A stretch of DNA of 64,000 bases from Macrostomum hystrix (lineage: Eukaryota; Animalia; Platyhelminthes). The stretch spans positions 1,612,001 through 1,676,000 of the forward strand of contig CATNEN010000014.1 in NCBI GenBank assembly GCA_950097015.1, read 5' to 3'. Shown here piece by piece: positions 18,510 to 33,393 of the stretch (the first letter of the stretch is position 1; the number at the start of each line of letters is the position of its first letter). The translations under genes and the position numbers were made by a program. The notes beneath the pieces were generated by a model, which worked only from the letters and a program-made list of their open reading frames with translations, had not been told where the DNA came from and made no database searches.

Positions 18510-18510
18510 C

Positions 18511-18547
<37 letters not shown>
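18510..18547. repeat. (CA)n microsatellite inside the Polinton
   Basis: Direct reading. Confidence 0.95.
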
Positions 18548-18549
<2 letters not shown>

Positions 18550-18773
18550 GGCGGCATGCATGTGAAGTGGAATGGCTTGTAAGCAAGCCATAAACTTATA
18601 ATAGAAAAATTTTCTATTTTCGTAGTAAAAAATCGATCTGCACAAACATAGCCAAACAGTAAACACTGGTGCTATGTTCTTCTGAAGAACAGCTACCTGG
18701 ATATTTATATATTACACCTGGAATTAATCAGTGGCGTCGCCAGAGATTAAAAAACTATCCTACTGGAGCCGCC

Positions 18774-20234
18774 ATGACTGCAAAAAACAAATCGCGCTGC
18801 CCATCCTACGTGTTCGAGGTGTGCATCGACTGCGGCCTGTGCGAGCTGGGCGGACTAAAATGGCACAAGTCAAAAGACTCATGCCGAGTTAGTCGCTGGC
18901 TTGCTTGCATGCAGTGCCAATCAGTCGAAGTTTTCAACGCTCGAGCACAAATAAAAAATCACAGAAACCATTTAGTGATCAATTGGGGTGCTCCAAGCGA
19001 CATGGATGCGTCCCGATCTGCTGCCCTCGAAGCTGCTCAGCACGACGAAGCTCGCAAAGAGTCTGAGCGAATGCGCCAGCCGGTGAGCACGCTCAGCCAG
19101 ACTATTCGAGGGATCTGCACTGAAATGTCTGATACCTACTCTGCTGCCACCCGAGTCGCCCTTGTCGTTGTTGCAGCCTCCGCCGCTGCAGCCGATGTTC
19201 AACCCTCCACCACCGCCGCACCTGATGTCCACGCCACCGCCGCACCTGATGTCCACTCCACCGCCGCACCTGATGTCCACGCCACCGTTGCACCTGATGT
19301 TCACGCCACCGCCGCACCTGATGTCCACACCATCGCACCTGGTGTCCACGCCACCGCCGCACCTGATGTCCACGCCACCGCCGCACCTGATGTCCACGCC
19401 ACCATCGCACCTGATGTCCACGCCACCGCCGCACCTGATGTCCACTCCACCACCGCACCTGATGTCCACGCCACCGTTGCACCTGATGTCCACGCCACCG
19501 CCGCACCTGATGTCCACTCCACCACCGCACCTGATGTCCACGCCACCGTTGCACCTGATGTTCACGCCACCGCCGCACCTGATGTCCACACCATCGCACC
19601 TGGTGTCCACGCCACCGCCGCACCTGATGTCCACGCCACCGCCGCACCTGATGTCCACGCCACCATCGCACCTGATGTCCACACCACCGCCGCACCTGAT
19701 GTCCACGCCACCGTCGCACCTGATGTCCTCGATGCCGCAGCCGCCACTGCTGCCTCCGCTAATGTAGTTGAGCTGGCCGCAGCTGAATTCAGGCCTGATC
19801 AGGTTATTAACTATCATGAGAATGATGATGATGAAGATGGCATTCCAATTATTCAGCTTGATTCACCCGCTGAGGAGCTGAACACAGCATTCTTCGAAGA
19901 CCTCGAGTTTGACTTGGAAGATGCCGCGAATACAGAAGGACAGCGGCAGCAGCAGCAGCAGCAGCAGCAACGACCCCCTCCAATTGCCGCAAAAAATCTG
20001 GAGCAGGCCAGAGCAATTGTGAACATGGACATCAGCTTGACGGACATTCTGCATGAACTAGAGCAGGATGAGCCAGCTGCTCAGCCTACTGTTATGCAAG
20101 AGGCAGTCAAAGTTGTAGAAGCCGCACCAGTCCCAGTCTTCATGCAGCTCGTGCTTCCCAGCAGCGTTGTCGGCGAGTACACCATTGACTTTGGGGGTGG
20201 TGTGTGCATTAAATTGAGTAGTGTTCAGCAGTAG
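18774..20234 (+). CDS. Polinton ORF1: Cys-rich N-terminus, 24-bp tandem repeat (PDVHATAA)n, acidic/Gln-rich C-terminus; function unknown
   Basis: Open frame 18669-20234. Probable start is GCCGCCATG at 18774, downstream of a TATA-like tatatatt near 18705. Confidence 0.7.
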   Translation: MTAKNKSRCPSYVFEVCIDCGLCELGGLKWHKSKDSCRVSRWLACMQCQSVEVFNARAQIKNHRNHLVINWGAPSDMDASRSAALEAAQHDEARKESERMRQPVSTLSQTIRGICTEMSDTYSAATRVALVVVAASAAAADVQPSTTAAPDVHATAAPDVHSTAAPDVHATVAPDVHATAAPDVHTIAPGVHATAAPDVHATAAPDVHATIAPDVHATAAPDVHSTTAPDVHATVAPDVHATAAPDVHSTTAPDVHATVAPDVHATAAPDVHTIAPGVHATAAPDVHATAAPDVHATIAPDVHTTAAPDVHATVAPDVLDAAAATAASANVVELAAAEFRPDQVINYHENDDDEDGIPIIQLDSPAEELNTAFFEDLEFDLEDAANTEGQRQQQQQQQQRPPPIAAKNLEQARAIVNMDISLTDILHELEQDEPAAQPTVMQEAVKVVEAAPVPVFMQLVLPSSVVGEYTIDFGGGVCIKLSSVQQ

Positions 20235-20756
20235 ATCGAACAATAGATTACTGTTAATTCCAATTTCCCATAAGCGTTGTGTCTCGAGTGACAGCATTTA
20301 AAGTCGGCATCCGTGTTCTATTTTTGCTGTTATATATAAGTAAATGATAATATTATTTGCCTTGAGACAGTTCACATTGTAACTTTTATTATGATGATGA
20401 TAAGGAGCGAGAAGTGATTTTTAGAGCATGATTTTCTGTGATGGTGTGTTTTTGGAAGAAATAAAATGGATTGAAATGATGCTCCGGACGCATTTGTTAT
20501 CATTAATTTTTATGAATTCACGGTTTTACGTATTTTTTCTTTAAATCAGGTTCTATAGCAGCTAGGATTCAATCACTCACTCAAACTCTTTGCTTTTAGG
20601 ATTGGTTTCAACTCTTGACTCTATGTGGACCAGACTAGAATTTGATCTATCGATATCGATGTATAATTTGCATGCAAAATGAAATTGAAACTGAATTTCA
20701 GCAGCATTGACTTGCTTTCTGAGTGGTGCCGCATAGCTTCACCATAATTCTCTGTG

Positions 20757-23700
20757 ATGTCTTCTGGGGCCTCATCGAGTCTCAAGGAAGCGCTGCTGGA
20801 CCCAGCTGTCAGTCGCGAGTTCGGGTCAAGCAGTAAGTGAAATATTTTATGCCTGACTTATTTGTTTGAACTACTTGACAAGGGCACACGTGCTTGTGGA
20901 TGATGTGCTTATTATGTTAGTTTTTGCTTGCTAGCTCGTTGTAGACATGCCTCTGCTACGGTATCGTTTTAAATTTAGGATTATTTCTCGGGAAATAAGT
21001 TAAAATGGGGGCATATGAACAGGATATGGAGTGAAATTAATCGTTGGGCTTAAAATTGGCTGAGGTGAAACAGAGAAGTATTTGAGCCTGAATGTTAAAG
21101 CAATAAATAAATGAAACCAATATTATTACTGTTGTCTTCCTCTTCCTCTTTAATTGTAGGACCATCTTTCTTCCTGACGTTGGAAAATAGCGCTCACGAT
21201 GATGTTCTTCAAGTTCATCGATTTACTCCGAAATCTATCACTGAGCCTTTCGAGTTTCTTGATTTAAGCAAAAACGCTGTCCTGCAGTGTCTTGAAGTTC
21301 GCCTCGACTCCTCTGAAAATTGCTTCGTGAGAGCTCAGATTAAGTTGAATTTGCACATGATCAGGGTGCAGGCGTTAGAAGTTGTAAATGCGGAGGATAA
21401 ATGGATGAGCACACAACTCGGATTGCTGGTAGATGTGGAGGAGTTCGATGATTGGTGGAGGCAGCAGTTTACGGAGCTGGAGCGCAAAGTCGATGTGTAC
21501 AACGCCAACGGTAGCGGTTGGATGATTGACAAGGTCAATTTTTTTGAACTTTACTCTGCTCTCGTCGATCGAGTTCCCTACTATACAGGGCGTGCTGCAG
21601 AATTTGTACTGCCGACTCTGCTTCTACGGAAGAAGGCTGTTATTTGTCCTCCAAGCAATGGTGAAAATTGTTTCCGTTATGCATGCCTTGCTTTCCTACA
21701 CAAGGAAAACAGCAAAATAAGAAAATCAGCGCAACGCGAATCCTCGTACACCGACTGGCTGGATGAACTCGACATGAGTGGTTTGAACTTGCCAGTCAAC
21801 GTGAACGACCTTGCTGCTGTTGAGAGACAAAACACAGGACTATGCTTCACAGTTTTCATCTGGGAGAATGATGCTGCTCAAGTCCTCCGCGTGCCTACTG
21901 CAGCCACAATGAAAGATCGAAGAGTTGTTCTGCTCTTGTTCGTTCCGCCATCGGAAGATGAGGTCTCAGGTCATTGGTGCGCTGTCTCAAGCATCAACCG
22001 GCTTCTCAATAGCAAAGTGTCCCTGCATCAGCGAAAGTGGTGTGAGCGCTGCTTGATGCCCTTTCACAGTGACTCAGCCTTTGAAGAGCACTGTCGAGCT
22101 CCTTGTCAACCTGGAGTGATCAACGTAAAGGAAGAGTTGCCAGATGTAAATCACAATTTTTTGCAATTTTCGTCATGGGAAAAAACAATCAGTCCACCAT
22201 TCGTTGTTTATGCCGACTTTGAAGCACTGAATGTACCATGTCAAGACGATCTACCAGCAGGTTCATCTACGAAGAAGGTCACTGAGCATGTTGCCGTTGC
22301 CGCGGGCTACATTGTGGTGCACAGAGAAGGCATGACAGGATTAGCACCTCGGGGAGCTGATGACAAAGTGAGCACTTTTGTTAGCGATGATCCCAACAAG
22401 TGCATTGCCGAGTTCCTGCAGTCACTGGAGCAGCTCGCTCGAGAAGTCTACGGCTGGAACACGGAGTTCAGTAGGCAGGCAGCCATAAAGACTGATGCAG
22501 CTAAAAAGCTGTTTCGAGAAGCCGTAGCCTGCTGCTACTGTGGAAGCCAGTTTCAGAACGAGTCCCAGAAACACTGGGATCATGATCACCTGAGTGGTAT
22601 ATTCCGAGGAGCCGCTTGCCCACCCTGCAACATGCAAGCGAGACTAAAGAGACGCTTTCTACCCATCATCATGCACAACTTAAAAGGGTATGACATTCAT
22701 CTGATGTTGTCAACAGCGTTGGGTCTCATGGAAGGATGGAGAATTTCAGTCATACCGCAGAATCCTGAGCAGTTTCTCGCTATGAAGATTGAATTCAAAA
22801 TCGATGAATATGAGAGTGAGGGCAAGATCAAGCCGCTCTATTTCACTATTCAATTCATCGATTCCAATCAGTTCCTGAATGCCAGCCTGGCACAGCTGAT
22901 CAAGAATTTGCCAGAAGAAGAATGCCCAATCACGGCTCGGCTTAAAAACTCGTATCCGAGTCTGTCATCGGAAGTGTTGTTCAACAAAGGCATCTTTCCG
23001 TATGATTATCTGACGAAGATCGATGTGCTCAATGACATGGTACTTCCCAGCAAAGAAAACTTTTATAATCTTCTTACGAAGAGTCACTGCAGCGACTCGG
23101 ATTATGAGCATGCACAGCGAGCCTGGCATGAATTTCAGGTGACCAATTTGAAGGACTACATGCTGCGCTACCTTGAGTTGGACATTAGACAGCTTGCAGA
23201 TGTGTTTGAAAATTTTCGGAAGCTCAGTCTTCGAGAGGATGGTCTTGATCCTGTTCATTTCATTACAACTCCAGGACTATCTTTTGCTTCTGCGCTAAAG
23301 TCCATCAGGTCTCCAATCGAACTTTTAACAGATCTGCAAATGTATTCAATGTTTGAGTGTGGAATTCGAGGAGGCATAACTTTTGTGAACGTTCACCGAG
23401 TGTTGGCAAGCCCACGTAATGTAAGCTCTCAGTGCGATGATGATGAGAGTGAGACAGACCTGACAACTCCACCAGCTGATCGCACTGAGCTCCTCGCAGT
23501 AGACGCCAACAACCTCTATGGACAAGCTCTCACGATGCATTTGCCAGTTGGAGACTTCCGCTGGCTAGACGAAGAAGAGTTGCTCCTATGGACAGATGAT
23601 CGTATTCAAGGACTGCAAACGACAGATTCTGTTGCCTACCTTATCGATGCTGACCTTCTGTACCCGATAGAGATTCATACCAGCACAGAAGATTTACCAT

Positions 23701-24872
23701 TTGCGCCAGAAAAGATGGCGCCGAGTTTCAGCGAGTTTCCTGAATACATGAAGCAGCTGTGGAAGCAATTTGGTAAAGAGGACTCTGCCTACCATCCAAC
23801 AGAGAAGCTAATGCTCACCTGCCATGACAAGAAGTCCTATATACTTCATTCTTCCATACTGGCATTTTACTTACGACATGGAATGCGAATAAAGTGTATC
23901 AATCGCATGATTGAGTTCCGACAAGAGCCCGTCTTTGCTTCGTATGTCGAGAAAAATAGTGCAAAGCGAGCTGCTGCATCAAACAGCTTTGAAAAAGATT
24001 TTTACAAGCTGAAAAACAACGCATTGTTTGGCAAGACAATGGAAAATGTGCGTAAGAGACGCGACATTAGAATTTGCACCGATGTTGCAAAGGCGAAGGT
24101 GCTCGCCTCGAAGCCGTCAGTGACAAGTTTCAACATTATTACCGGCTCGCTTAGCATTATGGAGTTGCAGAAGACCAAGATTAAACTTGACCGACCAATC
24201 TTCATTGGACAGTGCGTTCTGGACTATTCGAAGATGATCATGTATGAACTTTTCTACGACAAGCTCAAGCCATGGATTGAGCAGGAAGGAGCTTGTGTGA
24301 GACTCTGTGGTGGAGATACCGACTCTTTCTTTCTTTCAATCAGCAACATGAGCGTTCAGTCTGGAGTTCTGCCTCTGCTCAAGTCGAAGCGGTTATTAGA
24401 TACCTCAAACTATCCACCCCAGCATGCACTGTTCTCGAACGAATTAAAGGCTCGTCTGGGTTGCATCAAGGATGAAGCAGCAGGAGCTTACTATCTGGAG
24501 TGGCTGCTCCTAAGACCGAAGCTTTACTCGTTTAGGGCAAGCGATGAATCAGCCGAGAAGAAAAGAGCTAAAGGTATTCAGGGATGTGTTGTCAAGAGGG
24601 AGATTGCTCATAGCGACTACTTGAAGGTCTTCAAAGAGCTCTGCAGCCTCTCTGTCGTTGTTCAGCGTATTGCCAGCATACGACACAGACTCTTCACTCT
24701 GCAACAAAGGAAGTGTGCGCTTAGCATTTGGGAGGACAAGCGTGCCTGGCTAGGACCGAACTGCAGTCTCCCGTTCGGACACTTCCGACTTCTACAGCAG
24801 CAGCAACATCAAAATGGTATCACCAAACGCAAGCGGCGCCTAGCCAGTTCACGCCATCATGATGAGGATTAA
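20757..24872 (+). CDS. polB: Protein-primed family B DNA polymerase (pPolB); exon 1 20757-20832, intron 20833-21159, exon 2 21160-24872
   Basis: Exonuclease motifs VYADFE, HNLKGYD and YLELD. Polymerase motifs DANNLYG, KLKNNALFGKT and GDTDS. KGIFPYDY motif. Embedded Endo VII-like HDHLSG..CPPCN. The GTAAGT/AG splice joins in frame. Confidence 0.96.
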
Positions 24873-25556
24873 TCACGCGTTGATTATTTGACAGAAATCC
24901 AGTAATTTTAATTTCTGCTAATTCTGCATGTTAAAAAACGATTGACAAAACTGACTTAATTTTCGATTAAATCAGAACTTAAAAATCACTTAGAAATTTA
25001 GCCTAGTTATCTAGAAAACAAAAAGCTCTTTAGGTTTAAAGCAGACAATCCATTCGAAACTTTCTACGTTAATATTGACTAAATCGACTAATTGACTGAC
25101 GGATTGACTAAAGGAACTAAAGCTAATGCTAAAGGAATGAAAATCTGAGTTAAATTATTCACTGTTTTGAAAATGTTTCAAAACTTAAATGAACTATAAA
25201 AATATTTTACTTTTTCATGTGCGATGTGTACTTCGTATAATTGTGGTGGAGGTGATCATATGCTTGCTTGCTGTAGTTGTGTCGTGTTTGCGTAGGTTTT
25301 GCTTTCTAGTTTCTCTATTCTGCCCCTTTTTAACATTTTACCATTCGTAACTGTGGGTTTCTGGTTTGTTGCTTGTCGCGGTTTCGAACGATATTTTTAT
25401 TTTACGTCTGCGTCTGCGATTAAATTTAAAGAATCGAAATACTTTTTACAAAATAAAATTCAACGATGAAAGAAAATATATCTGACGCACTGATTTTGTT
25501 CAACAACATTTCAATCGGCATGAAAATTTGCTAGATTCTTGGAACACGCTTTCGAT

Positions 25557-26152
25557 TTATTTATTTTGAAAAAACAACGAATTCGCAGAGAGAAGGTTGA
25601 GCAAATGAGATAAGTCCTCCTCCAGCACATTCATTGACTTTGCACCACTGAGTACAAATGAGCCATTGTGAAATAGCAAACATTTACAATTACGGAGTTT
25701 ACATATTAAAGCAGTAAAAGTTTCGGGTTCATATTCAGCGTTCGGCAATGCATCAACAAGATTCGCCAAGGGAAGTGCATTGCTAAAATTAAGTTTGCCA
25801 TGCGCAGTGATAGTCTTGATTCTCAAGCAGACAGCTTGACGAGGCAGCAGTTGAGCCGGCACTCGGCGATGTAGCATAGCCACGAAGCGATGGGCAGCTC
25901 TGACTGAGTCGGAGTAGCACTTTGCGCCGCAGATGCTCAGTTGACCAGTTGGGTAGAGCAGCAGGGTGACTCTGGGTTGACGCATCTGCTTGATGAGCAC
26001 TCGGGGCCAAACGGGCCGGTAGATCACATTAGCCATGCTGAGAGCCAGCTCCCTTAAAGGAAGCTGGGCGCCCCTGCCTCCAGTCAGTCTTAGATCCACT
26101 CCGCCAACCAGATTGGTGACCCTCAGGGTTGAAGCTGCTGTATTCAATTCGA

Positions 26153-26190
<38 letters not shown>

Positions 26191-26216
26191 GGTGGTGGTG
26201 GTACCGGTGATGCCAT
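25557..26216 (-). CDS. Divergent TATA-box-binding protein (TBP)-like protein carried by the Polinton
   Basis: Two TBP repeats. First: VTNLVGGVDL...YRP...QPRVTLLLYPTGQLSICGAK. Second: IKTITAHGKL...EYEPETFTALICK...CLLFHNGSFVLSGAK. Poly-Ala N-terminus. Confidence 0.88.
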
Positions 26217-26246
26217 ACTTCGAGCTCTTTTGGTATGGACACCGCT

Positions 26247-26972
26247 TCAAACTTTTGAAAATATTTTTCTATTTTTCATTCGAGTTATTATAGCGTTTCT
26301 TCTGCCTTTGTTAAGCCTTAGCCACGCACACTCACTGCCTAATCCCTTGATTGGAGATTGTTCATTGCGAACTCTATCAGCGCCATCAGCAGTGTGCTGC
26401 AGAATTTGCTTGCGAGCAAACTTTCCAACTGCAGTCAAAGGGACATTTAGGTCCTTTTGTCTTAGTAAATTAATGAATTCTTTCCAGCCAGTTGGTTCAC
26501 TGGCACTCTGTGAGTCTCTTACAGTGTGCTGAATTAAATCCACAATGTTTGAGGCGGGGATCAAGCGGCCTGAAATCTCGACCTCCCCATTGTCATAAAC
26601 TCGGATTGAAGACTCATTACCGGACAGGATGGCCCATAGACTGCGAGCTCTTGCCTTGAACTTCTGTGGCACTGACTGATAGATCTTTTCATCCAAGTTT
26701 CTACCTGTCATCTCCACTTTCAAAACTTTTGCCTCACTACCTCTCACTTCGTTTCCTAGCTGCTTGCGTTTGACCAGCAGGCTTTTCATTGCACTCTGGT
26801 ACATGGCAGTCTTCACATCGTCAGGACAATCTTCAGCGAACAGAATTTCATCACACTTCATCTGCGCCTGTTTCATGGTCGCATCAGTTACAGACTCAGT
26901 GGGCTTTGCACTCTGTGTCAGCATTTCATACTCTGATTTCGCAATTAAAACCATTTCATTGAATTTGTGCAT
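26247..26972 (-). CDS. Uncharacterised Polinton protein (241 aa)
   Basis: Intact ORF in the gene cluster. SNIVDLIQ...PTGWKEF...NVP resembles conserved Maverick hypothetical proteins (from memory, not searched). Confidence 0.75.
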   Translation of the reverse strand: MHKFNEMVLIAKSEYEMLTQSAKPTESVTDATMKQAQMKCDEILFAEDCPDDVKTAMYQSAMKSLLVKRKQLGNEVRGSEAKVLKVEMTGRNLDEKIYQSVPQKFKARARSLWAILSGNESSIRVYDNGEVEISGRLIPASNIVDLIQHTVRDSQSASEPTGWKEFINLLRQKDLNVPLTAVGKFARKQILQHTADGADRVRNEQSPIKGLGSECAWLRLNKGRRNAIITRMKNRKIFSKV

Positions 26973-27279
26973 TTGCCCTCCTCTTCTTCACAAGTTTCAG
27001 CAGAACTGGAAGAATCTTGATGAAAGCAGCAGTCAGCAAATCAGCTTTTCTTTTCTTTGCAGGGATTCTGCGGATAATTTCCTTTGATTTTTTAAGTACA
27101 GCCTTCTCTTGAGGTGAGAAGGGTAAATTGTCTTGTAGCAGGTTGTGGCAGGCTTCAGCAAGGAAAATTCCAACTTCTTTTGGGCTTTCTTTTATTAACA
27201 TGCGCTTGAGGCGAATAGTGTATTTAGCATATGAGGCTAGAACTTCAAACAAACTTTGATGGCAATCAAACACTTCCAT
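26956..27279 (-). CDS. Small basic Polinton protein (~107 aa, from MEVFDCH)
   Basis: Sits between the ATPase and the 241-aa ORF. LAEACHNLLQDNLPFSPQEKAVLKK pattern resembles a small conserved Maverick protein. Confidence 0.65.
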   Translation of the reverse strand: MEVFDCHQSLFEVLASYAKYTIRLKRMLIKESPKEVGIFLAEACHNLLQDNLPFSPQEKAVLKKSKEIIRRIPAKKRKADLLTAAFIKILPVLLKLVKKRRANAQIQ

Positions 27280-27328
27280 ATTAATTTTCTTTGTTTGAAT
27301 GACCAGGATGATCACAAGTGATCCATTC

Positions 27329-27976
27329 TTAAGCATAGACCAGATGGGGGCGCTGATTGGGCAGAACTCGCGCTCGGACTCGCAGCTCATCGGGGGTGGA
27401 CGGGTGGAAATCCAGAAACAGATATGCCCCCCTACCCTGCGATGTGACATGCTTGAACACCGCAAGCAGAAAACTCGGCTTCTCGGGAAAGCACTGCCTG
27501 CCCAATGCGGAAATCTGCAGCTGATCTCTGGGGTTCTTCATGATTACGAAGTACATGGCATTCAAACTCATCGTCCGCAACTCCTTTCCCTTGAAAAACA
27601 TGTTCTGAGTCAGCATCACCAGAAAGCAGGGCAGATGATGGGCTATTCCAGTAAAGATATTTCGCATTGAAGCAGAACTTGAGCTTTCGTCAATCAAGTC
27701 GTCAAACACAACCAGGTCATTGGATCTGAGTGCTGTCTCAAAGTTGGAGGGGAATCCCTGCTGCAAGTGGACCCCCAGGCGGCTTAGCTCAGCATGCGCC
27801 GGCTGTGGAATCCCATAGTACCAGAGCACTCTGCCAGGTTGAATGTCGAATAGGACTTCCCTATACTGAATTAGATGCTTCACAAAGGTTGTCTTTCCCG
27901 CATTTGTGGGACCGCTGACAATCATGCAGCTGCCCTGACGCAGGCGAACATCGTAGCATGCTTTCTGAGATTCCAT
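27329..27976 (-). CDS. A32/FtsK-like genome packaging ATPase
   Basis: Walker A GPTNAGKT, Walker B LVVFDD, plus LTQNMF and KNPRD motifs. Confidence 0.95.
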   Translation of the reverse strand: MESQKACYDVRLRQGSCMIVSGPTNAGKTTFVKHLIQYREVLFDIQPGRVLWYYGIPQPAHAELSRLGVHLQQGFPSNFETALRSNDLVVFDDLIDESSSSASMRNIFTGIAHHLPCFLVMLTQNMFFKGKELRTMSLNAMYFVIMKNPRDQLQISALGRQCFPEKPSFLLAVFKHVTSQGRGAYLFLDFHPSTPDELRVRARVLPNQRPHLVYA

Positions 27977-28002
27977 CTCTTCAATAGACTTTCAGAATAT
28001 AC

Positions 28003-28518
28003 TCAAGGTTTCTGGGTTTTTCTTAAGCAAACTTCAAATTGCCTGAGTACTTTATCATTCAGGTGACATTTCTTCTTTGCATGCAGACTCGTGAGAATAC
28101 CCAGGAAGGACCGCTTCAAAGCTAGCCTCTGGTGGGCAAAGTAGACACAAAACAGGCCGCACTTGTCCGACTGAGCGCTTTGGATTTTATTGACGTTGCA
28201 AACCAGTTGAAATTGAACCATCCCACCTATATCCTTCAAGTATTCATGAATTACAGCTAAAGCTTCTTCATCCCAACCAAGAGAATTGAATAACTCCACT
28301 GTATTTCCATCAGCAAAGTGGCATACAACCCAGTGTCCAAAACTGACGCTGTGTTTTAGCAGAATGAAAATTATTTTATTTCGGTTGAAGCATTTTTTCA
28401 TCAAATTCTGGCCCGCATTTACAGTGACAGCTCTCTGCTTTAAGCAGAGAGTGAGTATAACGATTTTGGAGCTGGGTAAAAAGCTCCTTGTTAGAGAGTA
28501 CAGTTGAGTTGAGTCCAT
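28003..28518 (-). CDS. Adenain/Ulp1-like cysteine maturation protease
   Basis: GHWVVC (His), FNSLG and IQSAQSDKCGLFC (Gln...Cys). Confidence 0.92.
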   Translation of the reverse strand: MDSTQLYSLTRSFLPSSKIVILTLCLKQRAVTVNAGQNLMKKCFNRNKIIFILLKHSVSFGHWVVCHFADGNTVELFNSLGWDEEALAVIHEYLKDIGGMVQFQLVCNVNKIQSAQSDKCGLFCVYFAHQRLALKRSFLGILTSLHAKKKCHLNDKVLRQFEVCLRKTQKP

Positions 28519-28530
28519 CTTTCAGTACTC

Positions 28531-29811
28531 TCAAGATGAATAGTCCAGCAAGAGCTCCCTGTGCTTGGTTACTTCAATCAGTGAGTCATAGACGCACATG
28601 ACAATCAGCGACACGGCTTCATCCAGTGCCCGTCGAAAGCGAATCTCCAGCCGCAGGTTTCCCTCCTTCTGGCCGTACCACAGAGCTGCTCCCTCAGGTG
28701 TGAGATCAAATGCGAACACTGTGTTCTCGTTCGAGAACAGTTGGTAGGGAATCCACGGAACTGAACCACTGGAGCTTGCAGATTGGCAGCTTTTCAAATA
28801 GTGCAGGTACTCCCTCACAAACGAATTGTTCTCGGGTGTGAATGCCCCATGGCACATTGATTCACCCCCTTTCTTGAGAGCTAGCTGGCTCAGCTCGAAG
28901 CTTTGGAACTGGAACGGGCTGGAGTGGTGATGACCGTTGAAGGCTCGGTGGCTCACAAATGCCAGCATGATGAACTTCGGGAGCTTTCCGTGCGTGAATC
29001 CCTCGATGTTCTTTGACTGAATTCCATGGGGCAGGATAAAGTTCTGCATTTCAGTTCGCTCGATCGGGTAGAGAGCATTTTGATTCGTTAGTCCCTGCTC
29101 ATGAGCCAGGCTGATGTGGGGCACCACCTTGACACGGCGAAGGTACAGGATGCAGTGGGAAATTTCCATTCGGTAAGCTGTGGTGTTGAGGGCAGGAGCT
29201 CTAATGGCAAAGGCTCCATCGCTGGGCACTAGTTTGATGTGCAGGTGCAAGTTGTTGAGCAGGAACACGGGGCACTGGAAGATGTCGCTGAGGAGGGGTC
29301 CCGCATATTCCACCCAGTTGGAGATCATATGCCTCTCGGTGTGGCTCTCATCGGCAGAGTCGGGTTCCAGGAATCCAGCAGGGTAAAACTTAAGCTGCTG
29401 GGCATCGGAGGAGCTCATGAGAGCTTTGAAGTAGGCATGGTAGGGATACAGCTGGTCTCCTCCAGAGACAATGCGCTGGTTGATGCTGACAATTACATCC
29501 GAGAAGGCCGTAGCTAGAACAAAATTCTCCGGGTGCACTTGGCTGTCTCTGCGCTCGGTAACAGCACCATCAGTCACAATATCCTCCCTGATCAGGGCAC
29601 CACCCAATCTCACAACGCGACAACGAATATAGAGAAAGGAATTCAGCAGGTCAGTGTACTCATCAGCTGATTGATGGCAGTCAAATTCAATTGGTGAGTT
29701 TGCAACAATAGAGTTTACAGGATGAATGTCAACATAAGCAGATTTCTCAATACAGGTCTGAAGCACAGGCGCCTTGAACAGATCGAGTCTAGGGTTGAAC
29801 CCGTAAGCCAT
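28531..29811 (-). CDS. Major capsid protein (double jelly-roll type)
   Basis: 426 aa. LDLFKAPVLQT, PIEF, YTDL..SFLYI, LYPYHAYFK, LPKFIMLAFV, AFNG and FAFDLTP motifs match Polinton MCPs. Confidence 0.92.
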   Translation of the reverse strand: MAYGFNPRLDLFKAPVLQTCIEKSAYVDIHPVNSIVANSPIEFDCHQSADEYTDLLNSFLYIRCRVVRLGGALIREDIVTDGAVTERRDSQVHPENFVLATAFSDVIVSINQRIVSGGDQLYPYHAYFKALMSSSDAQQLKFYPAGFLEPDSADESHTERHMISNWVEYAGPLLSDIFQCPVFLLNNLHLHIKLVPSDGAFAIRAPALNTTAYRMEISHCILYLRRVKVVPHISLAHEQGLTNQNALYPIERTEMQNFILPHGIQSKNIEGFTHGKLPKFIMLAFVSHRAFNGHHHSSPFQFQSFELSQLALKKGGESMCHGAFTPENNSFVREYLHYLKSCQSASSSGSVPWIPYQLFSNENTVFAFDLTPEGAALWYGQKEGNLRLEIRFRRALDEAVSLIVMCVYDSLIEVTKHRELLLDYSS

Positions 29812-29815
29812 ATTG

Positions 29816-30184
29816 TTAGGACAGAGAATCCAGTACGCGTTTCACAGTTTTTCTGTAGATTTTTTGCTTTCCTTGTCCTACCTTTTTCTGTTTCCTAGTT
29901 TTTCTCTTCTTCTTAAGCTTTTTGTTTCCGGCCCTCGTCTGATTTTTTCTTGAACTCTTCTTTCCTGTGTCACCCTTAGCAGAATGTTTTCGTTTTCTTT
30001 TCGATCGCACAGATGGCTTTTTACTTTCCCTTTTGTCTATTAGCCGCGCTGCACCTGCAGTTGTAGCAACCGGTGGAGGTTGGTACGTCATGAGCCCTGG
30101 AGCGCTGCCGCAGCCATAGAGTACCGGTTTCTCCCCAAGGGTTTGAACTCCCGAGTAATGCCGAATCAGCTGCTGGTAATTCAT
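29816..30184 (-). CDS. Basic, pVII-like DNA-condensing core protein
   Basis: Lys/Arg-rich C-terminal half with a GxG motif (LYGCG). Located between mCP and MCP. ATGA start/stop overlap with mCP. Confidence 0.75.
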   Translation of the reverse strand: MNYQQLIRHYSGVQTLGEKPVLYGCGSAPGLMTYQPPPVATTAGAARLIDKRESKKPSVRSKRKRKHSAKGDTGKKSSRKNQTRAGNKKLKKKRKTRKQKKVGQGKQKIYRKTVKRVLDSLS

Positions 30185-30993
30185 AAAATTCTTTTTTCAC
30201 GGATCTGAATTGTTAGCAAAACTGGACTGCTGGACTGCGCGATCAGTAGGCTTCCAAAAATATCTCGCAACTGCACTCGAATACCATGTAGATAGATGAC
30301 TCTAGGAATGGTGAAGAATATCGTTTTCTTAAACACTTTGCTCACATAGCCACCCCATTGAATGTCATCTCTCATTCTAACAGTTCTCAGCAGGGAGCTG
30401 TGGTTGCAGTTGTTCGACTCAATGATGCTGCAGTGCACATTGATTAGGTTGGTGCGCGGGCAGCCGATGAACTGCTCAGATACGAGACGCCCAGGTGGGA
30501 CTTTTAATCCTTGGCTTCCGAATCCAAGCCACTGCAGAATCCGGTGAGGCGGGAGATACAGCTCCACCTGAGCTGTGTTATTCTGCACAACTGTCCTTGA
30601 GCCATCAATTGTACACCTTATTCCATTGTCCGCAGCAGGTGCAGAATGTCCCATCAGACCTGACTGATCAGCCTCCATTGCAGCATCTCCATCACTTCTA
30701 GCATCAAAGAACTGCAGCCGTGAGTTGGCTAGCAGCTCATTCAAAGACTCCACCAGCTCCTCCACTCTGCCAAAGCATCCAGGTTGAAGAACCAGGGTCT
30801 CATGCTCTCTTCCATCTGAGACAGAGATGCAGTAAGGTTCGTCAAGATTGAACCATGCAGCAGGTAGATGGATTTCCACAAGAGCTGCCTCATAGTCCAC
30901 ATTTCGATCCAGGTAAAGAGGTGAAGCAAGGTAAAAATAAAAATCACTAGAAATACCTTCACCATGGTTGCTGTTGATGACAATGTTTCTCAT
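30181..30993 (-). CDS. Minor capsid (penton-like) protein
   Basis: DFYFYLASPLYL...YEAALVEI, INVHCSIIE, SLLRTV and IRVQLRDIFG motifs. Confidence 0.88.
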   Translation of the reverse strand: MRNIVINSNHGEGISSDFYFYLASPLYLDRNVDYEAALVEIHLPAAWFNLDEPYCISVSDGREHETLVLQPGCFGRVEELVESLNELLANSRLQFFDARSDGDAAMEADQSGLMGHSAPAADNGIRCTIDGSRTVVQNNTAQVELYLPPHRILQWLGFGSQGLKVPPGRLVSEQFIGCPRTNLINVHCSIIESNNCNHSSLLRTVRMRDDIQWGGYVSKVFKKTIFFTIPRVIYLHGIRVQLRDIFGSLLIAQSSSPVLLTIQIREKRIL

Positions 30994-31026
30994 TATATCT
31001 GATTATTTTTTTTATCTGCAGCTTAT

Positions 31027-32124
31027 CTACACTTTTCTTAAGTCCTTTTCATCCACCCAGCCTGTGGAGTTGTAGCCAGCCCACTTGACAAGATAGCGGA
31101 TTTTCCCATTGCGCTTTTCTGACTTCAAAACCTTCTCAATGACATACAGCCGCTGTGATTCCGGAACAGCCTGCAGCTCATACTCGTGAAAGAGCCCGCG
31201 AATCTCCTCACCCTTCATGTCTCGGATCTTGTACATGTACGGGTAGTGCTTTGGTGCCCTGCACACTACAGTGTATACCTCCTCGCTCCAGTTGGCCTTG
31301 TATCCCTTTCGGAACAGCCTGGGTGCATTTGAAATTCTCACAGACTGTTTCTCACAGAACTTTGGCTTCTTGGGTCGCTGTACAGTCTCAATTGCCTTTC
31401 CGTCGTACAGATTCATCCACACCTCAGACTCATTCTCTTTGCAGACACTTGTCGGTGCCATTTTGATACTTCTGTGGTAAGTATTGTTGTATGATTTCAC
31501 CAGCTTAGGCAGCACATCAATCCAGAGCAGTGTGCTCTTGTGAGTGAAATATTTCCACATCTTACTCTTCAAAGTTCGGTTCCATCGCTCAATTACTGCA
31601 GCTTTCTGCTCACTGTTAGTTTTGAAGGCCAGGATTCCCCGCTGTATGCAGAACTGCCTAAAATTAGTGTTTATGAATTCTTTTCCCTGATCTGTGCGGA
31701 CTGTGCGAGGCTGGCGCTTTGAGCATCTCAAAATGCTCTCGAATGCGGACTTTACTTCTGCAGCTGATTTGTTCTTCAACGGCTTGGCCCATGCTGATTT
31801 AGACAACACGTCAATGCAAGTGAGGATGTACTTGTAGCCTTTGTTGTACTTGGCGAATGGGATCATCTCGACCAGGTCAAGTTCCCACTGGTCATCTATC
31901 GCTCTCACTATGATTGGTGCTCTGGGATAGCGCCTTCTAGCCGACCTGTGCAGTGTGTGCACGGGCTGTTCAGTTAACCACAGCTCAATGTATTTTCTAG
32001 ATTTCCCCTCATTATTTTTCCCTAGTTGCTGCTGCAACTTTGATGCACCTGAGAAACTGGCCGGCTGAGCGGGATTGTAGTAAAGCTTTTCCATTTTCCA
32101 ACATGAAGAGGATGTCAGAATCAA
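31027..32124 (-). CDS. int: Retroviral-like (rve) integrase with C-terminal chromodomain
   Basis: DDE triad in WELDL, RTDQGKEF and IERWNRTLK. Chromodomain YVIEKVL...YLVKWAGY. Probable start MEKLYYNP. Confidence 0.96.
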   Translation of the reverse strand: MILTSSSCWKMEKLYYNPAQPASFSGASKLQQQLGKNNEGKSRKYIELWLTEQPVHTLHRSARRRYPRAPIIVRAIDDQWELDLVEMIPFAKYNKGYKYILTCIDVLSKSAWAKPLKNKSAAEVKSAFESILRCSKRQPRTVRTDQGKEFINTNFRQFCIQRGILAFKTNSEQKAAVIERWNRTLKSKMWKYFTHKSTLLWIDVLPKLVKSYNNTYHRSIKMAPTSVCKENESEVWMNLYDGKAIETVQRPKKPKFCEKQSVRISNAPRLFRKGYKANWSEEVYTVVCRAPKHYPYMYKIRDMKGEEIRGLFHEYELQAVPESQRLYVIEKVLKSEKRNGKIRYLVKWAGYNSTGWVDEKDLRKV

Positions 32125-32376
32125 TATTATTTATTGTCTTTAGCAACTTTCTTAAGTTGCATTGCCACAATGTAGTTTATAAAATGTCTTGATACATATA
32201 CCGAGAAATAAAGCCAAAAAGACAGTTAAATTAGCTATTGCGAAAAGCACAGAGCAAAATTACACTGTAGCCTATATTGCTGAAATATGGCTGGATAGGT
32301 CAAATAAGCTTAGTGCGCATTTGACCAAATGAAAGAAGTTAGAAATTATTTGACGCATGTACTGTCACTTGGAAAT

Positions 32377-33135
32377 TCACTCGTTGTCCTTGTTTTCATC
32401 TGAGTCATCCGTCAGCTTCGGAAACTTGATCGCATCGCTCCTACGCAGAGGCCATGGCTGCTTGCGCTTGCGGCTTCCGATCAAGCAGTTGACACTGAGA
32501 CCCGCAGCCGCTCGGGCCTGGTACCAGTAAGGATCCTGAGACAGGTCGCTGTCCTGCTGTGGGATGCAGCCGAATGCTTTGGGCGTCGAAAGTTGGGCTG
32601 CAGCTGGAAGCGGTTCGGAGGTTGCGTTGTCTGACTCGGAAATCAGCAGCGTCTTCTCGTCGTCCGCATCCTCACTAGAGTGTTGGCCCGCCCGATTCTC
32701 GATGTCCGGCTCGGTCTTGATGTCCTGAGGGTCCAGCTCGTACTCGCACTCCGGTGACTTTCCTCTCAGCTCACTACTGATCCGGTCGACATGGCACCAC
32801 AGCGCTCGCCACAGACGGGGAGTCATCTCGATCGAATTCCGTCTCAGGAAATCCTCCGTGCAGTCCTCCGGCAGTCGCTTGAGCCAGATGACTCCTCGCT
32901 TGACTTCTACGAGCTTGTCGGAGCCCAGCTTGGCAGTGACGTTTCGTCGGTTGACTGCAGCCTGCACGAGTTGGCGCCTTAGCTGCTTCAGCTTCTCCCA
33001 TTGGTGTACGTTCAAGTTGAATCCAGGGATTCCAGGCTTCAGCTCCCCGTCAGAAGAGTAGAAGCGTCGGATAGCGATGAATCTATTGCCTTCATACTCC
33101 TGCACTTGAACTTTGAAGCCGTCGCTAAGATCCAT
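32377..33135 (-). CDS. PC4/Sub1-like ssDNA-binding transcription-coactivator protein, probably with two PC4 repeats
   Basis: VQVQEYEGNRFIAIRRFY...KPGIPGFNLNVHQWEKL, then a second degenerate repeat ending SIEMTPRLWRAL...I. TATATAAG box near 33216-33223. Confidence 0.85.
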   Translation of the reverse strand: MDLSDGFKVQVQEYEGNRFIAIRRFYSSDGELKPGIPGFNLNVHQWEKLKQLRRQLVQAAVNRRNVTAKLGSDKLVEVKRGVIWLKRLPEDCTEDFLRRNSIEMTPRLWRALWCHVDRISSELRGKSPECEYELDPQDIKTEPDIENRAGQHSSEDADDEKTLLISESDNATSEPLPAAAQLSTPKAFGCIPQQDSDLSQDPYWYQARAAAGLSVNCLIGSRKRKQPWPLRRSDAIKFPKLTDDSDENKDNE

Positions 33136-33393
33136 GGTAGCAGGTCAAACTTACGTGACGAAATGGCTATTAGTTTTAAAGAAATCCTCTCTTAACAATA
33201 AAAAAATCCCCACCCTTATATACCAGCGGAGTGGGGTGGGTTAATGTAATGGGGTGGGTGAGACTGTGGGCGCATATATAATACTAAGAAAACATATAAT
33301 AACATTAGGCAGAGTTTATGTATCCATGCTACGCATCCACTGTCCTATTTCTACAGTGTTGGCCATACCCACTGCAAACAGACGGTGGTTTCA

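What the first reader, a model, noticed from the sequence alone, without database searches (positions are those of the whole stretch)
25557..26216. A metazoan Polinton/adintovirus carrying its own divergent TATA-binding protein
Seen: an intact, intronless 219-aa ORF inside the TIRs with both TBP repeats. Repeat 2 keeps the YEPExF stirrup (the two Glu that contact TFIIB in eukaryotic TBP) and both DNA-intercalating Phe positions. Repeat 1 is remodelled (NPKRF becomes RPVWP, LIF becomes LLY), and the conserved Asn of repeat 2 is lost. Known: canonical Polinton gene sets (pPolB, INT, ATPase, PRO, MCP, mCP) do not include TBP, and viral TBPs are mainly known from large nucleocytoviruses. I do not recall a TBP in an animal Polinton, but I cannot search. 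Inference: the element may reprogramme or bypass host TFIID with an altered-specificity TBP that still recruits host TFIIB, or it may use the protein as a dominant-negative decoy.
Basis: partly seen in the sequence, partly recalled or inferred. Interest (0 to 1): 0.88.

Follow-up and report, generated by a model that had tools for sequence, protein, structure and literature searches.

The report
Flatworm Polinton carrying its own TBP
A young, intact-looking 16-kb virus-like transposon (Polinton/Maverick) in a flatworm-type genome carries a genuine but lopsided TATA-binding protein, and its relatives in Macrostomum keep the same gene, so the element probably brings its own promoter-recognition factor, something otherwise known mainly from much larger viruses.

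Summary
Window 25557-26216 (-) is an uninterrupted 219-aa ORF that is a two-repeat TBP by Pfam (85.8 bits, E 1.9e-24) and by fold (AlphaFold pLDDT 92.5; TM up to 0.89 to solved TBPs). It lies inside a 16,067-bp Polinton/Maverick with 501-nt TIRs (99%), a 6-bp target-site duplication, pPolB, rve integrase and a double-jelly-roll capsid gene.

Repeat 2 keeps both Phe and the acidic stirrup. Repeat 1 has Pro and Tyr in place of its two Phe, and the repeat-2 Asn is Thr. These changes are fixed in all five close relatives (52-75% identity; Macrostomum lignano, SRA assemblies, one metagenome). Repeat 1 is the more conserved half of the family. One M. lignano gene model strings capsid, ATPase, ORF241 and TBP pieces in the window's order. 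So this is a stable lineage gene, not a one-off capture.

It has no close cellular or viral relative (about 28% identity to any other TBP). The function is inferred: an element-specific, altered-specificity basal factor, analogous to TLF/TRF2 or the herpesvirus TBP mimic.

It is not wholly unprecedented: the 2021 adintovirus paper lists "TBP" in a gene-map legend.

The parts
17824..33890 (.). Whole Polinton/Maverick element, 16,067 bp
   Evidence: Bounded by 501-nt TIRs, 99% complementary, and a 6-bp target-site duplication. No other copies of its genes occur elsewhere in the window.
17818..17823 (.). Left target-site duplication (CAGGAC)
   Evidence: Read directly. The same 6 bp lie at 33891-33896.
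17824..18324 (.). Left terminal inverted repeat; begins with AG and holds 76-nt sub-repeats (3.5 copies)
18669..20234 (+). ORF521, unknown function; contains a 24-nt x 21.9 tandem repeat (19210-19728); coding status uncertain
   Evidence: No Pfam family above cut-off.
21111..24872 (+). [quoted passage not shown]
   Evidence: Pfam DNA_pol_B_2 E 3.4e-17 and Endonuclease_7 E 1.2e-7
25557..26216 (-). TBP gene (219 aa), the finding
26139..26216 (-). TBP residues 1-26: Pro/Ala-rich N-terminal extension, partly a (GCT)n microsatellite, absent from relatives
   Evidence: pLDDT 67-78
25851..26138 (-). TBP repeat 1 (residues 27-122): remodelled, both Phe replaced (P71, Y88); the more conserved half within the family
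25581..25850 (-). TBP repeat 2 (residues 123-212): canonical Phe pair (F167, F182) and acidic stirrup (E163, E165) kept; Asn replaced by Thr135
26247..26972 (-). ORF241, unknown function, directly upstream of the TBP gene
   Evidence: No Pfam family. One metagenome relative at 42%. 68% match to a segment of M. lignano model P0011.
26956..27465 (-). ORF169, unknown function; overlaps both neighbours; coding status uncertain
27329..27976 (-). Candidate packaging ATPase (215 aa)
   Evidence: Only faint P-loop and Pox_A32 matches, all below cut-off. 72% match to a segment of P0011.
28003..28518 (-). Candidate adenain-like cysteine protease (171 aa)
   Evidence: Pfam Peptidase_C5 E 0.0085, 16.2 bits, below the 21.3-bit cut-off
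28531..29811 (-). Major capsid protein with a double-jelly-roll fold (426 aa)
   Evidence: AlphaFold pLDDT 69.7, pTM 0.70. Foldseek matches the PBCV-1, SGIV, Sputnik and mavirus capsid proteins, E 3e-14 to 1e-12, TM about 0.5. Relatives at 28-79% identity.
29816..30184 (-). ORF122, unknown function
30181..30993 (-). ORF270, unknown function; minor-capsid candidate by position only (inference)
   Evidence: No Pfam or PDB match
31027..32124 (-). Retrovirus-like integrase with a C-terminal chromodomain-like segment
   Evidence: Pfam rve E 1.3e-13. Chromo E 1.1e-4, 22.5 bits, just below the 25.1-bit cut-off.
32377..33135 (-). ORF252 with an N-terminal PC4/Sub1-type ssDNA-binding domain
   Evidence: Pfam PC4 E 4.5e-11. 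PDB human PC4 (4usg, 1pcf) E 4e-6.
33390..33890 (.). Right terminal inverted repeat
33891..33896 (.). Right target-site duplication (CAGGAC)
27326..32156 (-). Span holding the five copies of CTTAAGAA, at 32149-32156, 31035-31042, 29910-29917, 28020-28027 and 27326-27333; a candidate gene-start signal of the leftward gene block
   Evidence: These are the only copies in 64 kb, and all are on the minus strand. They lie 32, 49, 106 and 51 nt upstream of the INT, ORF270, MCP and ATPase ORF starts. It is the only one of 516 strand-exclusive 8-mers with at least 5 copies that is dispersed yet confined to 5 kb.

Best explanation
The ORF encodes a structurally complete but asymmetric TBP paralogue. It is a resident accessory gene of a young, intact-looking Polinton/Maverick lineage of macrostomid flatworms.

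Most likely it is an element-specific basal transcription factor. The saddle binds promoter DNA. The canonical C-terminal repeat still kinks the upstream end of its site, and its acidic stirrup remains available to host TFIIB. The remodelled but strongly conserved N-terminal repeat shifts sequence preference away from a canonical TATA box. Host RNA polymerase II machinery would thereby be brought to the element's own, largely TATA-less gene starts.

Shown: the fold, the residue pattern, the position inside the element, conservation across the family, and linkage to capsid-module genes in a sibling. Inferred: DNA binding, changed specificity, TFIIB recruitment, and the benefit to the element.
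For: Fold and family:
- Pfam TBP 85.8 bits, two repeats.
- AlphaFold pLDDT 92.5. The top 44 Foldseek PDB matches are all TBPs, including the TFIIB/TBP/TATA complexes 1ais and 1vol, with TM 0.77-0.89.

Residues:
- Four columns are near-invariant Phe in the outgroups. The window protein and all 5 relatives keep the two in repeat 2 and replace the two in repeat 1.
- By PMC3142196, the C-terminal pair kinks the 5' end of the TATA box and the N-terminal pair kinks the 3' end.
- E163 and E165 in the repeat-2 stirrup are kept.

Constraint:
- Six family members at 52-75% identity all pass the Pfam TBP cut-off, and the full-length ones have similar length.
- Repeat 1 has 44% invariant columns against 26% for repeat 2. 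For the beta-strands the figures are 62% and 34%.
- The core has a net charge of +12 to +18.

Residency:
- The gene is inside the TIRs and TSD.
- GC3 is within the element's range.
- M. lignano model P0011 chains segments matching the MCP end, ATPase start, ORF241 start and TBP, in the window's order, at 68-88% identity.
- A metagenome lineage shows matching divergence of MCP (58%), TBP (52%) and ORF241 (42%).

Promoters: a canonical TATA word lies upstream of only 2 of 12 ORFs.

Precedents: TLF/TRF2 does not bind TATA but binds TFIIA and TFIIB. Herpesvirus ORF24 is a TBP mimic that drives late promoters through host Pol II.
Against: - There are no binding, expression or transcript-start data of any kind.
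- No dN/dS could be computed, because DNA of sibling copies was not fetched.
- No promoter motif is tied to the protein.
- The residue after the second stirrup Glu differs from the outgroup majority and varies within the family, so TFIIB contact may be altered.
- The tight packing of the leftward genes would also fit a few long transcripts from one or two ordinary promoters. The best TATA box sits next to the right TIR. In that case a dedicated factor would not be needed.
- The close family is seen so far only in Macrostomum and a few unnamed assemblies.
Confidence: 0.55

Rival explanations
1. Decoy or dominant-negative factor. The protein keeps partner-binding surfaces (TFIIB, perhaps TFIIA, NC2 or Mot1) but binds host TATA promoters poorly. 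It would titrate host initiation or repressor factors, either damping host transcription or relieving repression of the element.
For: - The repeat-2 stirrup Glu residues are kept while half of the TATA-kinking Phe set is lost.
- TLF is reported to modulate transcription negatively by sequestering TFIIA (PMC3142196).
Against: - The concave-face strands of the remodelled repeat 1 are the most conserved part of the family (62% invariant), and the core is strongly basic. That is unexpected if DNA contact no longer mattered.
- An endogenous element gains little from a general shut-off of its host.
Confidence: 0.15
2. Passenger gene. A TBP paralogue was captured once by an ancestor of this Polinton lineage and is carried along without a role for the element, not yet decayed.
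For: - Polintons and adintovirus-like elements carry many sporadic 'homologs of host proteins' (legends).
- Close relatives are known only from one flatworm genus and a few unnamed assemblies.
Against: - The gene is still a full two-repeat TBP in members down to 52% identity, the same order of divergence as the capsid gene (58%).
- The lineage-specific substitutions are fixed in 6 of 6 members.
- It is only about 28% identical to any cellular TBP, so the capture is old.
- Its position next to ORF241 and the ATPase is kept in a sibling.
Confidence: 0.12
3. Architectural DNA-bending protein used for something other than transcription, for example bending the repeat-rich TIR ends for protein-primed replication, integration or packaging.
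For: - TBP-fold saddles bend DNA sharply.
- The TIRs hold 3.5 copies of a 76-nt sub-repeat that could be protein-binding sites.
- The element also carries a PC4-type ssDNA-binding domain that could serve replication.
Against: - I found no precedent for a two-repeat TBP used in this way.
- The TFIIB-facing stirrup residues are conserved, which a purely architectural role would not require.
Confidence: 0.08
4. Not an element gene at all: a host gene or host pseudogene that merely lies between two unrelated inverted repeats, or an assembly artefact.
For: None found.
Against: - The 501-nt TIRs are 99% complementary, with a perfect 6-bp TSD.
- pPolB, integrase and a DJR capsid gene lie within the same bounds.
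- The same gene is linked to capsid-module genes in M. lignano.
- It is only about 26% identical to canonical animal TBP (human TBP core).
Confidence: 0.02

Closest known systems
Cellular TBP (Pfam PF00352; archaeal and eukaryotic TATA-binding proteins)
   Same: Two tandem repeats, the saddle fold (TM 0.77-0.89, rmsd about 2 A), a core-only length, and the repeat-2 Phe pair and acidic stirrup.
   Different: Only 24-33% identical to any other TBP. Both repeat-1 Phe, the repeat-2 Asn and several conserved Lys, Val and Pro are replaced. It sits on a long branch with no stable sister. It is encoded by a mobile virus-like element.
TLF / TBPL1 / TRF2 (metazoan TBP-like factor)
   Same: A core-only TBP paralogue with the TATA-contact residue set partly lost. 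TLF does not bind TATA yet binds TFIIA and TFIIB (PMC3142196). A mite protein named 'TBP-like protein' (P0064) likewise lacks both repeat-1 Phe and keeps both repeat-2 Phe.
   Different: No orthology signal. Identity to P0064 is 31%, against an outgroup median of 27.7%, and P0064 is sister in only 7 of 100 bootstraps. P0064 keeps the repeat-2 Asn and has different replacements. TLF is a host gene found in all metazoans.
Beta-/gamma-herpesvirus TBP mimic (KSHV ORF24 and orthologues; viral pre-initiation complex)
   Same: A virus that depends on host RNA polymerase II encodes its own TBP-like promoter reader for non-canonical promoters of its late (virion) genes, and it needs TBP-like Phe residues. 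This is the closest precedent for the proposed mechanism.
   Different: ORF24 is a large multidomain protein that binds Pol II directly, is predicted to be incompatible with TFIIB binding, and needs five viral partners. It shows no sequence-level TBP match: no herpesvirus protein appears among the top 50 BFVD matches listed. The window protein is a plain TBP core that retains TFIIB-type stirrup residues.
TBP-like proteins of Nucleocytoviricota (for example Heterosigma akashiwo virus, mimivirids, marseilleviruses, asfarvirus B263R homologues)
   Same: Virus-encoded TBP-fold proteins. They are the only viral matches named in the top 50 BFVD hits (PMC5825884).
   Different: They are 7-21% identical with TM at most 0.75, so further away than cellular TBPs. 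They act with a virus-encoded RNA polymerase (PMC7458399 abstract). This element encodes no RNA polymerase.
[quoted passage not shown] 2021, Fig. 5 legend)
   Same: A mid-size PolB plus integrase type element annotated with a TBP-like gene.
   Different: It is only a legend entry. The element is not named in the text. The section title speaks of non-animal eukaryote datasets. There is no analysis of residues, conservation or function, and no flatworm is mentioned. Whether it is homologous to this family is unknown.
Polinton / Maverick (polintovirus, adintovirus-like) elements
   Same: pPolB, rve integrase, long TIRs starting with AG, a 6-bp TSD and a DJR capsid gene, plus candidate protease and ATPase.
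   Different: It carries a TBP and a PC4-domain gene as accessories. The PolB has an Endonuclease VII-like segment.

Membership tests
TBP family (PF00352, TBP-like fold) | Two tandem TBP repeats | tested here: met
   Pfam reports two stretches, 85.8 bits against a 22.9 cut-off. Repeat 1 against repeat 2: 28% identity, E 7e-6.
TBP family (PF00352, TBP-like fold) | Saddle-shaped alpha/beta fold, five strands plus two helices per repeat | tested here: met
   AlphaFold pLDDT 92.5 with the expected order of secondary-structure elements. Foldseek TM 0.77-0.89 to solved TBPs.
TBP family (PF00352, TBP-like fold) | Four DNA-kinking phenylalanines, two per repeat | tested here: not met
   Only the repeat-2 pair is present (F167, F182). 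Repeat 1 has P71 and Y88. 49 of the 67 aligned TBPs have all four.
TBP family (PF00352, TBP-like fold) | Conserved Asn at the equivalent position of each repeat | tested here: not met
   N35 is kept. The repeat-2 position is T135, where 92% of outgroups have Asn.
TBP family (PF00352, TBP-like fold) | Acidic C-terminal stirrup facing TFIIB | tested here: met
   E163 and E165 are kept (outgroups 85% and 95%). Actual binding cannot be tested here.
TBP family (PF00352, TBP-like fold) | Sequence-specific binding and bending of a TATA box | not testable with these tools
   No binding data. Only 2 of 12 ORFs have a TATA word upstream.
Polinton / Maverick | [quoted passage not shown] | tested here: met
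   Pfam DNA_pol_B_2 E 3.4e-17 in the 1253-aa ORF
Polinton / Maverick | Retrovirus-like (rve) integrase | tested here: met
   Pfam rve E 1.3e-13
Polinton / Maverick | Long terminal inverted repeats and a 6-bp target-site duplication | tested here: met
   501-nt TIRs at 99%. CAGGAC on both sides.
Polinton / Maverick | Double-jelly-roll major capsid protein | tested here: met
   Model pTM 0.70. Foldseek E about 1e-13 to the PBCV-1, SGIV, Sputnik and mavirus capsid proteins. TM is only about 0.5.
Polinton / Maverick | Minor capsid (penton) protein | not tested
   ORF270 is a candidate by position only.
Polinton / Maverick | Adenain-like maturation protease | tested here: inconclusive
   Peptidase_C5 at 16.2 bits, below the 21.3-bit cut-off
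Polinton / Maverick | FtsK/A32-type packaging ATPase | tested here: inconclusive
   Only faint P-loop and Pox_A32 matches with E 0.01-0.3
Adintovirus (proposed family, Starrett et al. 2021) | PolB and virion proteins that group with the Alpha or Beta adintovirus clades | not tested
   The label 'adintovirus' is therefore not claimed.
TLF / TBPL1 / TRF2 | Orthology with the metazoan TBP-like factor | tested here: inconclusive
   31% identity to the one named TBP-like protein retrieved (P0064), against an outgroup median of 27.7%. P0064 is sister in 7 of 100 bootstraps. No named flatworm TLF was available.
Nucleocytoviricota TBP-like proteins | Closer to viral than to cellular TBPs | tested here: not met
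   BFVD matches are 7-21% identical with TM at most 0.75. PDB cellular TBPs are 21-29% identical with TM up to 0.89.

The most novel reading that the evidence does not exclude
A lineage of animal Polintons carries a small initiation kit of its own: an altered-specificity TBP, a PC4/Sub1-type cofactor, and a shared gene-start word (CTTAAGAA) in front of its integrase and virion genes. The remodelled TBP would read that word in place of a TATA box. These would then be the smallest known virus-like elements that specify their own core-promoter recognition while using host RNA polymerase II. Metagenomic TBPs that share the same diagnostic substitutions (P0036, P0122) would mark a wider, unrecognised clade of such factors in other mid-size DNA viruses.
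Probability: 0.15. Interest if true: 0.8.

Novelty: new variant of a known kind. Interest (0 to 1): 0.6.

Why it matters
Polintons/Mavericks and adintovirus-like elements are thought to depend entirely on the host's nuclear transcription machinery. Virus-encoded TBP homologues have so far been discussed for giant viruses with their own RNA polymerase, for mirusvirus-type elements, and, as a distant mimic, for herpesviruses.

A 16-kb element that stably keeps a complete but one-sidedly remodelled TBP shows that core-promoter recognition can be an accessory function even in very small DNA elements. It also offers a natural half-canonical TBP: one repeat is intact and the other is rebuilt yet conserved. 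That is informative about how each half of the saddle contributes to promoter choice.

There is a practical point as well. Automatic M. lignano gene models fuse pieces of this element with host genes. One example is an 'Ig-like domain' protein of 1733 aa that starts with a TBP repeat. Annotation of TBP-like genes in flatworm genomes therefore needs care.

Tried and rejected
- **Origin of the gene.** A Kimura-distance NJ tree with 100 bootstraps on 67 TBPs gives a monophyletic family (95/100) but no stable sister (best 57/100, an unnamed metagenome protein). Names of 30 nearest proteins show plants, algae, Blastocystis, a tapeworm TBP paralogue, a mite TBP-like protein and unnamed contigs, all at 24-33% identity. 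Recent capture from canonical host TBP is rejected. A deeper origin is unresolved.
- **Archaeal ranking in the PDB search.** This comes from two overlapping stretches being counted, not from affinity. Foldseek ranks archaeal and eukaryotic TBPs equally.
- **Synteny through the adjacent ORF241.** Only one distant metagenome hit was found, and none in annotated M. lignano. Linkage instead came from the chimeric model P0011.
- **TATA enrichment.** Rejected. TATAWA density is 1.06/kb in the element against 1.98/kb in the window, and it lies upstream of only two genes. No TATT-type late box was found upstream of any gene.
- **Sequence-level identification of the ATPase, protease, ORF270, ORF241, ORF169, ORF122 and ORF521.** Nothing above cut-off in Pfam or the PDB.
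- **Rfam scan of the window.** Nothing found.
- **Literature.** No paper combines adintovirus with 'TATA-binding protein'. Searches for polinton or mavericks plus TATA give only the Starrett legend as relevant. No supplement text is held. Nothing on PC4 in Polintons or on Polintons in Macrostomum.
- I did not fetch DNA of sibling copies (look-up of encoding contigs, the search for related loci, the DNA search on collections), so there is no dN/dS, no copy census and no test of the motif in siblings.
- **Host.** The contig is not human. Its closest proteins are from a flatworm.
Full report
**1. The observation**

The ORF listing gives an ATG-initiated, uninterrupted ORF of 219 aa at 25557-26216 on the minus strand.
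- Pfam-A assigns it to PF00352 (TBP) with E 1.9e-24 and 85.8 bits, against a curated cut-off of 22.9, in two stretches.
- phmmer against all PDB sequences returns 35 distinct sequences, all of them TBPs, with E 2e-19 to 1e-9.
- The two halves of the protein match each other (28% identity, E 7e-6).

This is far beyond chance, and the coordinates are exact.

**2. Fold**

An AlphaFold2 model built on a 67-sequence alignment (A2) has mean pLDDT 92.5 and pTM 0.82. Each repeat shows the expected run of strands and helices. Foldseek against the PDB gives 44 matches with E below 1e-3. All are TBPs: archaeal, yeast, plant and human, including the TFIIB/TBP/TATA complexes 1ais and 1vol. Target-normalised TM is 0.77-0.89 for free-standing TBP chains, and rmsd is about 2-3 A. 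Only the first 26 residues are less confident. They form a Pro/Ala tract, partly encoded by a perfect (GCT)11.7 microsatellite that relatives lack.

**3. Residues**

I compared the protein column by column with 61 outgroup TBPs and printed only shares.

| Window position | Residue | Outgroup majority (share) |
|---|---|---|
| 35 | Asn, kept | Asn (95%) |
| 162 | Tyr, kept | Tyr (85%) |
| 163 | Glu, kept | Glu (85%) |
| 164 | Pro, kept | Pro (98%) |
| 165 | Glu, kept | Glu (95%) |
| 167 | Phe, kept | Phe (97%) |
| 182 | Phe, kept | Phe (97%) |
| 71 | Pro | Phe (90%) |
| 88 | Tyr | Phe (89%) |
| 135 | Thr | Asn (92%) |
| 137 | Thr | Val (80%) |
| 92 | Gln | Lys (79%) |
| 186 | Ser | Lys (75%) |
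| 168 | Thr | Pro (89%) |

[quoted passage not shown] So this protein keeps the upstream kink apparatus and the stirrup that faces TFIIB, and has lost the downstream one.

**4. The element**

- The ORF sits inside a 16,067-bp element (17824-33890).
- The element is bounded by 501-nt TIRs that are 99% complementary and begin with AG.
- It is flanked by a perfect 6-bp duplication, CAGGAC, at 17818-17823 and 33891-33896.
- On the plus strand it encodes a repeat-containing ORF521 and a 1253-aa protein-primed PolB.
- On the minus strand, in order, it encodes: a PC4-domain ORF, an rve integrase with a chromodomain-like tail, ORF270, ORF122, a 426-aa ORF, a candidate adenain-like protease (below cut-off), a candidate P-loop/A32-like ATPase (faint), ORF169, ORF241 and the TBP.
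- The 426-aa ORF folds (pTM 0.70) as a double-jelly-roll capsid protein. Its best matches are the PBCV-1, iridovirus, Sputnik and mavirus major capsid proteins (E 3e-14 to 1e-12, TM about 0.5).
- All listed ORFs are open as they stand. I saw no break in the two genes I could compare with full-length relatives (TBP and capsid), and I did not compare the others.
- The near-identical TIRs and the intact TSD point to a recent insertion.
- The flanks are retrotransposon debris and short tandem repeats.
- The contig is not human. Its nearest proteins are from a flatworm.

**5. Relatives of the TBP**

The word-indexed search found nine proteins. The exhaustive HMMER search of 1.84 billion representatives found 1047 with E of 1e-3 or better, but only five below 1e-30.

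The close family consists of:
- four Macrostomum lignano records: P0001 (190 aa, 75%), and P0005, P0010 and P0011, which are longer automatic gene models;
- three clusters from SRA assemblies (P0002-P0004, 69-70%);
- one metagenome protein (P0012, 52%).

After these comes a gap to about 30% identity. A distance tree keeps the family together in 95 of 100 bootstraps but gives it no stable sister. Identity of the core to the 61 outgroups is 23.6-32.7%, with a median of 27.7%. Named proteins among the nearest hits are plant, algal, Blastocystis, tapeworm 'TBP-like 2' and mite 'TBP-like' proteins. BFVD matches are all from nucleocytoviruses and are more distant than cellular TBPs (7-21% identity). 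The gene is therefore neither a recent copy of the host's canonical TBP nor a relative of giant-virus TBPs. Its deeper origin stays open.

**6. A stable gene of the lineage or a one-off?**

Several lines point to stability.
- (a) All six diagnostic substitutions are identical in the window protein and in the five full-length relatives.
- (b) The remodelled repeat 1 is the more conserved half: 44% invariant columns against 26%, and 62% against 34% for the strands. The core is strongly basic, +12 to +18. That fits a constrained nucleic-acid-binding face and argues against decay.
- (c) The M. lignano model P0011 (UniRef A0A1I8HSG7) strings together pieces that match the window's genes in the window's order:

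| P0011 residues | Matches in the window | Identity |
|---|---|---|
| 1-40 | end of the capsid gene | 88% |
| 33-93 | start of the ATPase ORF | 72% |
| 94-174 | start of ORF241 | 68% |
| 238-347 | TBP repeat 1 | 83% |

  So a sibling locus in M. lignano has the same gene order.
- (d) JGI metagenome proteins show matching divergence for the capsid (58%), TBP (52%) and ORF241 (42%). This is compatible with a second, more distant lineage that carries all three, although co-location was not shown.
- (e) GC and GC3 of the TBP gene lie within the range of the other element genes.

I could not compute dN/dS or count copies, because that needs the DNA of sibling elements (see section 10).

**7. Mechanism**

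The element has no RNA polymerase gene, so its genes must be read by the host's nuclear machinery. My preferred reading (confidence 0.55) is an element-specific basal factor: a TBP that still bends DNA at the upstream edge of its site and offers a TFIIB-type stirrup, but whose rebuilt N-terminal repeat prefers something other than a canonical TATA box.

Two precedents frame this. The metazoan TLF/TRF2 does not bind TATA but binds TFIIA and TFIIB. The herpesvirus TBP mimic ORF24 reads non-canonical late promoters and brings in host Pol II. In line with this, a canonical TATA word lies within 150 nt upstream of only two of the twelve ORFs: the PC4 ORF, next to the right TIR, and the integrase.

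The rival readings are a decoy that titrates partners, a passenger gene, an architectural role at the TIRs, and a host gene or artefact. They are set out with their evidence in the Rival explanations section. The last is effectively excluded.

**8. A lead, not a result**

A simple shared-word search upstream of the genes turned up CTTAAGAA in 4 of 11 upstream regions, against a shuffle 95th percentile of 3.
- In the whole 64-kb window this word occurs five times. All five are on the minus strand within the leftward gene block.
- Four lie 32, 49, 106 and 51 nt upstream of the integrase, ORF270, capsid and ATPase ORF starts. The fifth is at the ATPase stop.
- Of 516 strand-exclusive 8-mers with five or more copies, it is the only one that is dispersed yet confined to 5 kb.
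- A one-mismatch copy lies about 99 nt upstream of the TBP start.

It may be a promoter, a trans-splice signal or another processing signal. M. lignano uses spliced-leader trans-splicing (title and abstract of PMC8629364). Nothing links the word to the TBP. The word was also found by a post-hoc search in a single element.

**9. What is known**

The searchable literature has no paper that combines adintovirus with 'TATA-binding protein'. Among papers that hold polinton or mavericks together with TATA, the only relevant mention is in Starrett et al. 2021. The Fig. [quoted passage not shown] The preprint's Fig. [quoted passage not shown] The text does not name the element, mentions no flatworm, and discusses no residues or function. 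TBP genes are also noted sporadically in mirusvirus-related elements of a green alga.

A TBP-like accessory gene in this class of element has therefore been seen before. What appears undescribed is:
- a conserved, half-remodelled TBP family resident in an animal Polinton lineage with intact ends;
- its pairing with a PC4-type gene.

I rate it a new variant of a known kind, with interest 0.6.

**10. Steps left out, and a slip**

I could not tell whether endogenous sibling copies of this element count, so I did not use the look-up of encoding contigs, the search for related loci or collection scans with the DNA search for any of its genes.

While reasoning I also recalled a few canonical TBP letters and residue numbers. 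Papers later confirmed the late-promoter word and the human Phe numbers. No conclusion depends on recalled letters.

Noticed in passing
window 32377-33135 (-): The element's first leftward gene has an N-terminal PC4/Sub1-type domain (Pfam E 4.5e-11; human PC4 structures E 4e-6) followed by about 200 residues of unknown nature. PC4 is both a Pol II coactivator and an ssDNA binder. The ORF could therefore partner the TBP, or serve as the single-strand-binding protein of protein-primed replication. No literature on PC4 in Polintons was found.
   Followed up: partly
window 27326-32156 (-): sites at 32149-32156, 31035-31042, 29910-29917, 28020-28027, 27326-27333: CTTAAGAA occurs five times in the 64-kb window. 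All copies are on the coding strand of the leftward gene block, and four lie 32-106 nt upstream of ORF starts. It is a candidate gene-start or RNA-processing signal. It was not tested in sibling elements.
   Followed up: partly
window 17839-18167 and 33589-33875: Each TIR holds about 3.5 copies of a 76-nt sub-repeat (154-nt super-unit). These are possible protein-binding arrays at the element's ends.
   Followed up: no
window 19210-19728 (+), within ORF521: A 24-nt unit is repeated 21.9 times (87% matches) inside the GC-rich ORF521. It gives an 8-residue protein repeat, with long ORFs on both strands. It is unclear whether ORF521 is a real gene.
   Followed up: no
window 21111-24872 (+), PolB residues 462-509: The PolB ORF has an Endonuclease VII-like segment (Pfam E 1.2e-7) just in front of the polymerase domain.
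   Followed up: no
window 26155-26189: A perfect (GCT)11.7 microsatellite encodes the poly-Ala run in the TBP's N-terminal extension. Relatives start close to the core and lack it, so it is probably young and length-variable.
   Followed up: partly
window 17780-17823 and 33897-33950: Both flanks of the insertion consist of short ACGTTA-containing repeats (13-nt tandem array at 33904-33950). The element apparently inserted into a simple tandem-repeat tract.
   Followed up: no
proteins P0010, P0011 and P0005 (Macrostomum lignano records): Automatic gene models fuse pieces of this element family with other sequence. P0010 is a 1733-aa 'Ig-like domain' protein that begins with a TBP repeat. P0011 is a 586-aa 'Parvo_NS1 domain' protein that chains capsid, ATPase, ORF241 and TBP pieces. 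P0005 is a 359-aa model with an unrelated N-terminus. These are annotation artefacts that could mislead surveys of TBP paralogues in flatworms.
   Followed up: partly
proteins P0036 and P0122 (ENA metagenome contigs of about 1 kb): Two environmental TBPs, only 26-30% identical to the window protein, share its diagnostic substitutions. P0036 shares Tyr88, Gln92, Thr135 and Thr137 and has also lost Phe71; P0122 shares Tyr88, Thr135 and Thr137. P0036 is the most frequent sister in the bootstraps (57/100). They may mark a wider clade of half-remodelled TBPs of unknown context.
   Followed up: partly
window 486-4418 (-), 11637-13169 (-), 55890-56480 (-): Retrotransposon remains lie outside the element: RT, RNase H and aspartyl-protease ORFs, and a DUF5641 ORF typical of BEL/Pao-type elements. 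The region is repeat-rich.
   Followed up: no
window 40478-40527 / 48453-48502, and 59488-59532: Three copies of a 45-50-nt terminal-repeat-like sequence in alternating orientation (93-96% complementary) suggest one or more other DNA transposons to the right of the Polinton.
   Followed up: no
window 62974-63948 (-): A 324-aa ORF with a SET domain (Pfam E 3.6e-14) near the right end of the window. It could be a host gene fragment or part of another element.
   Followed up: no
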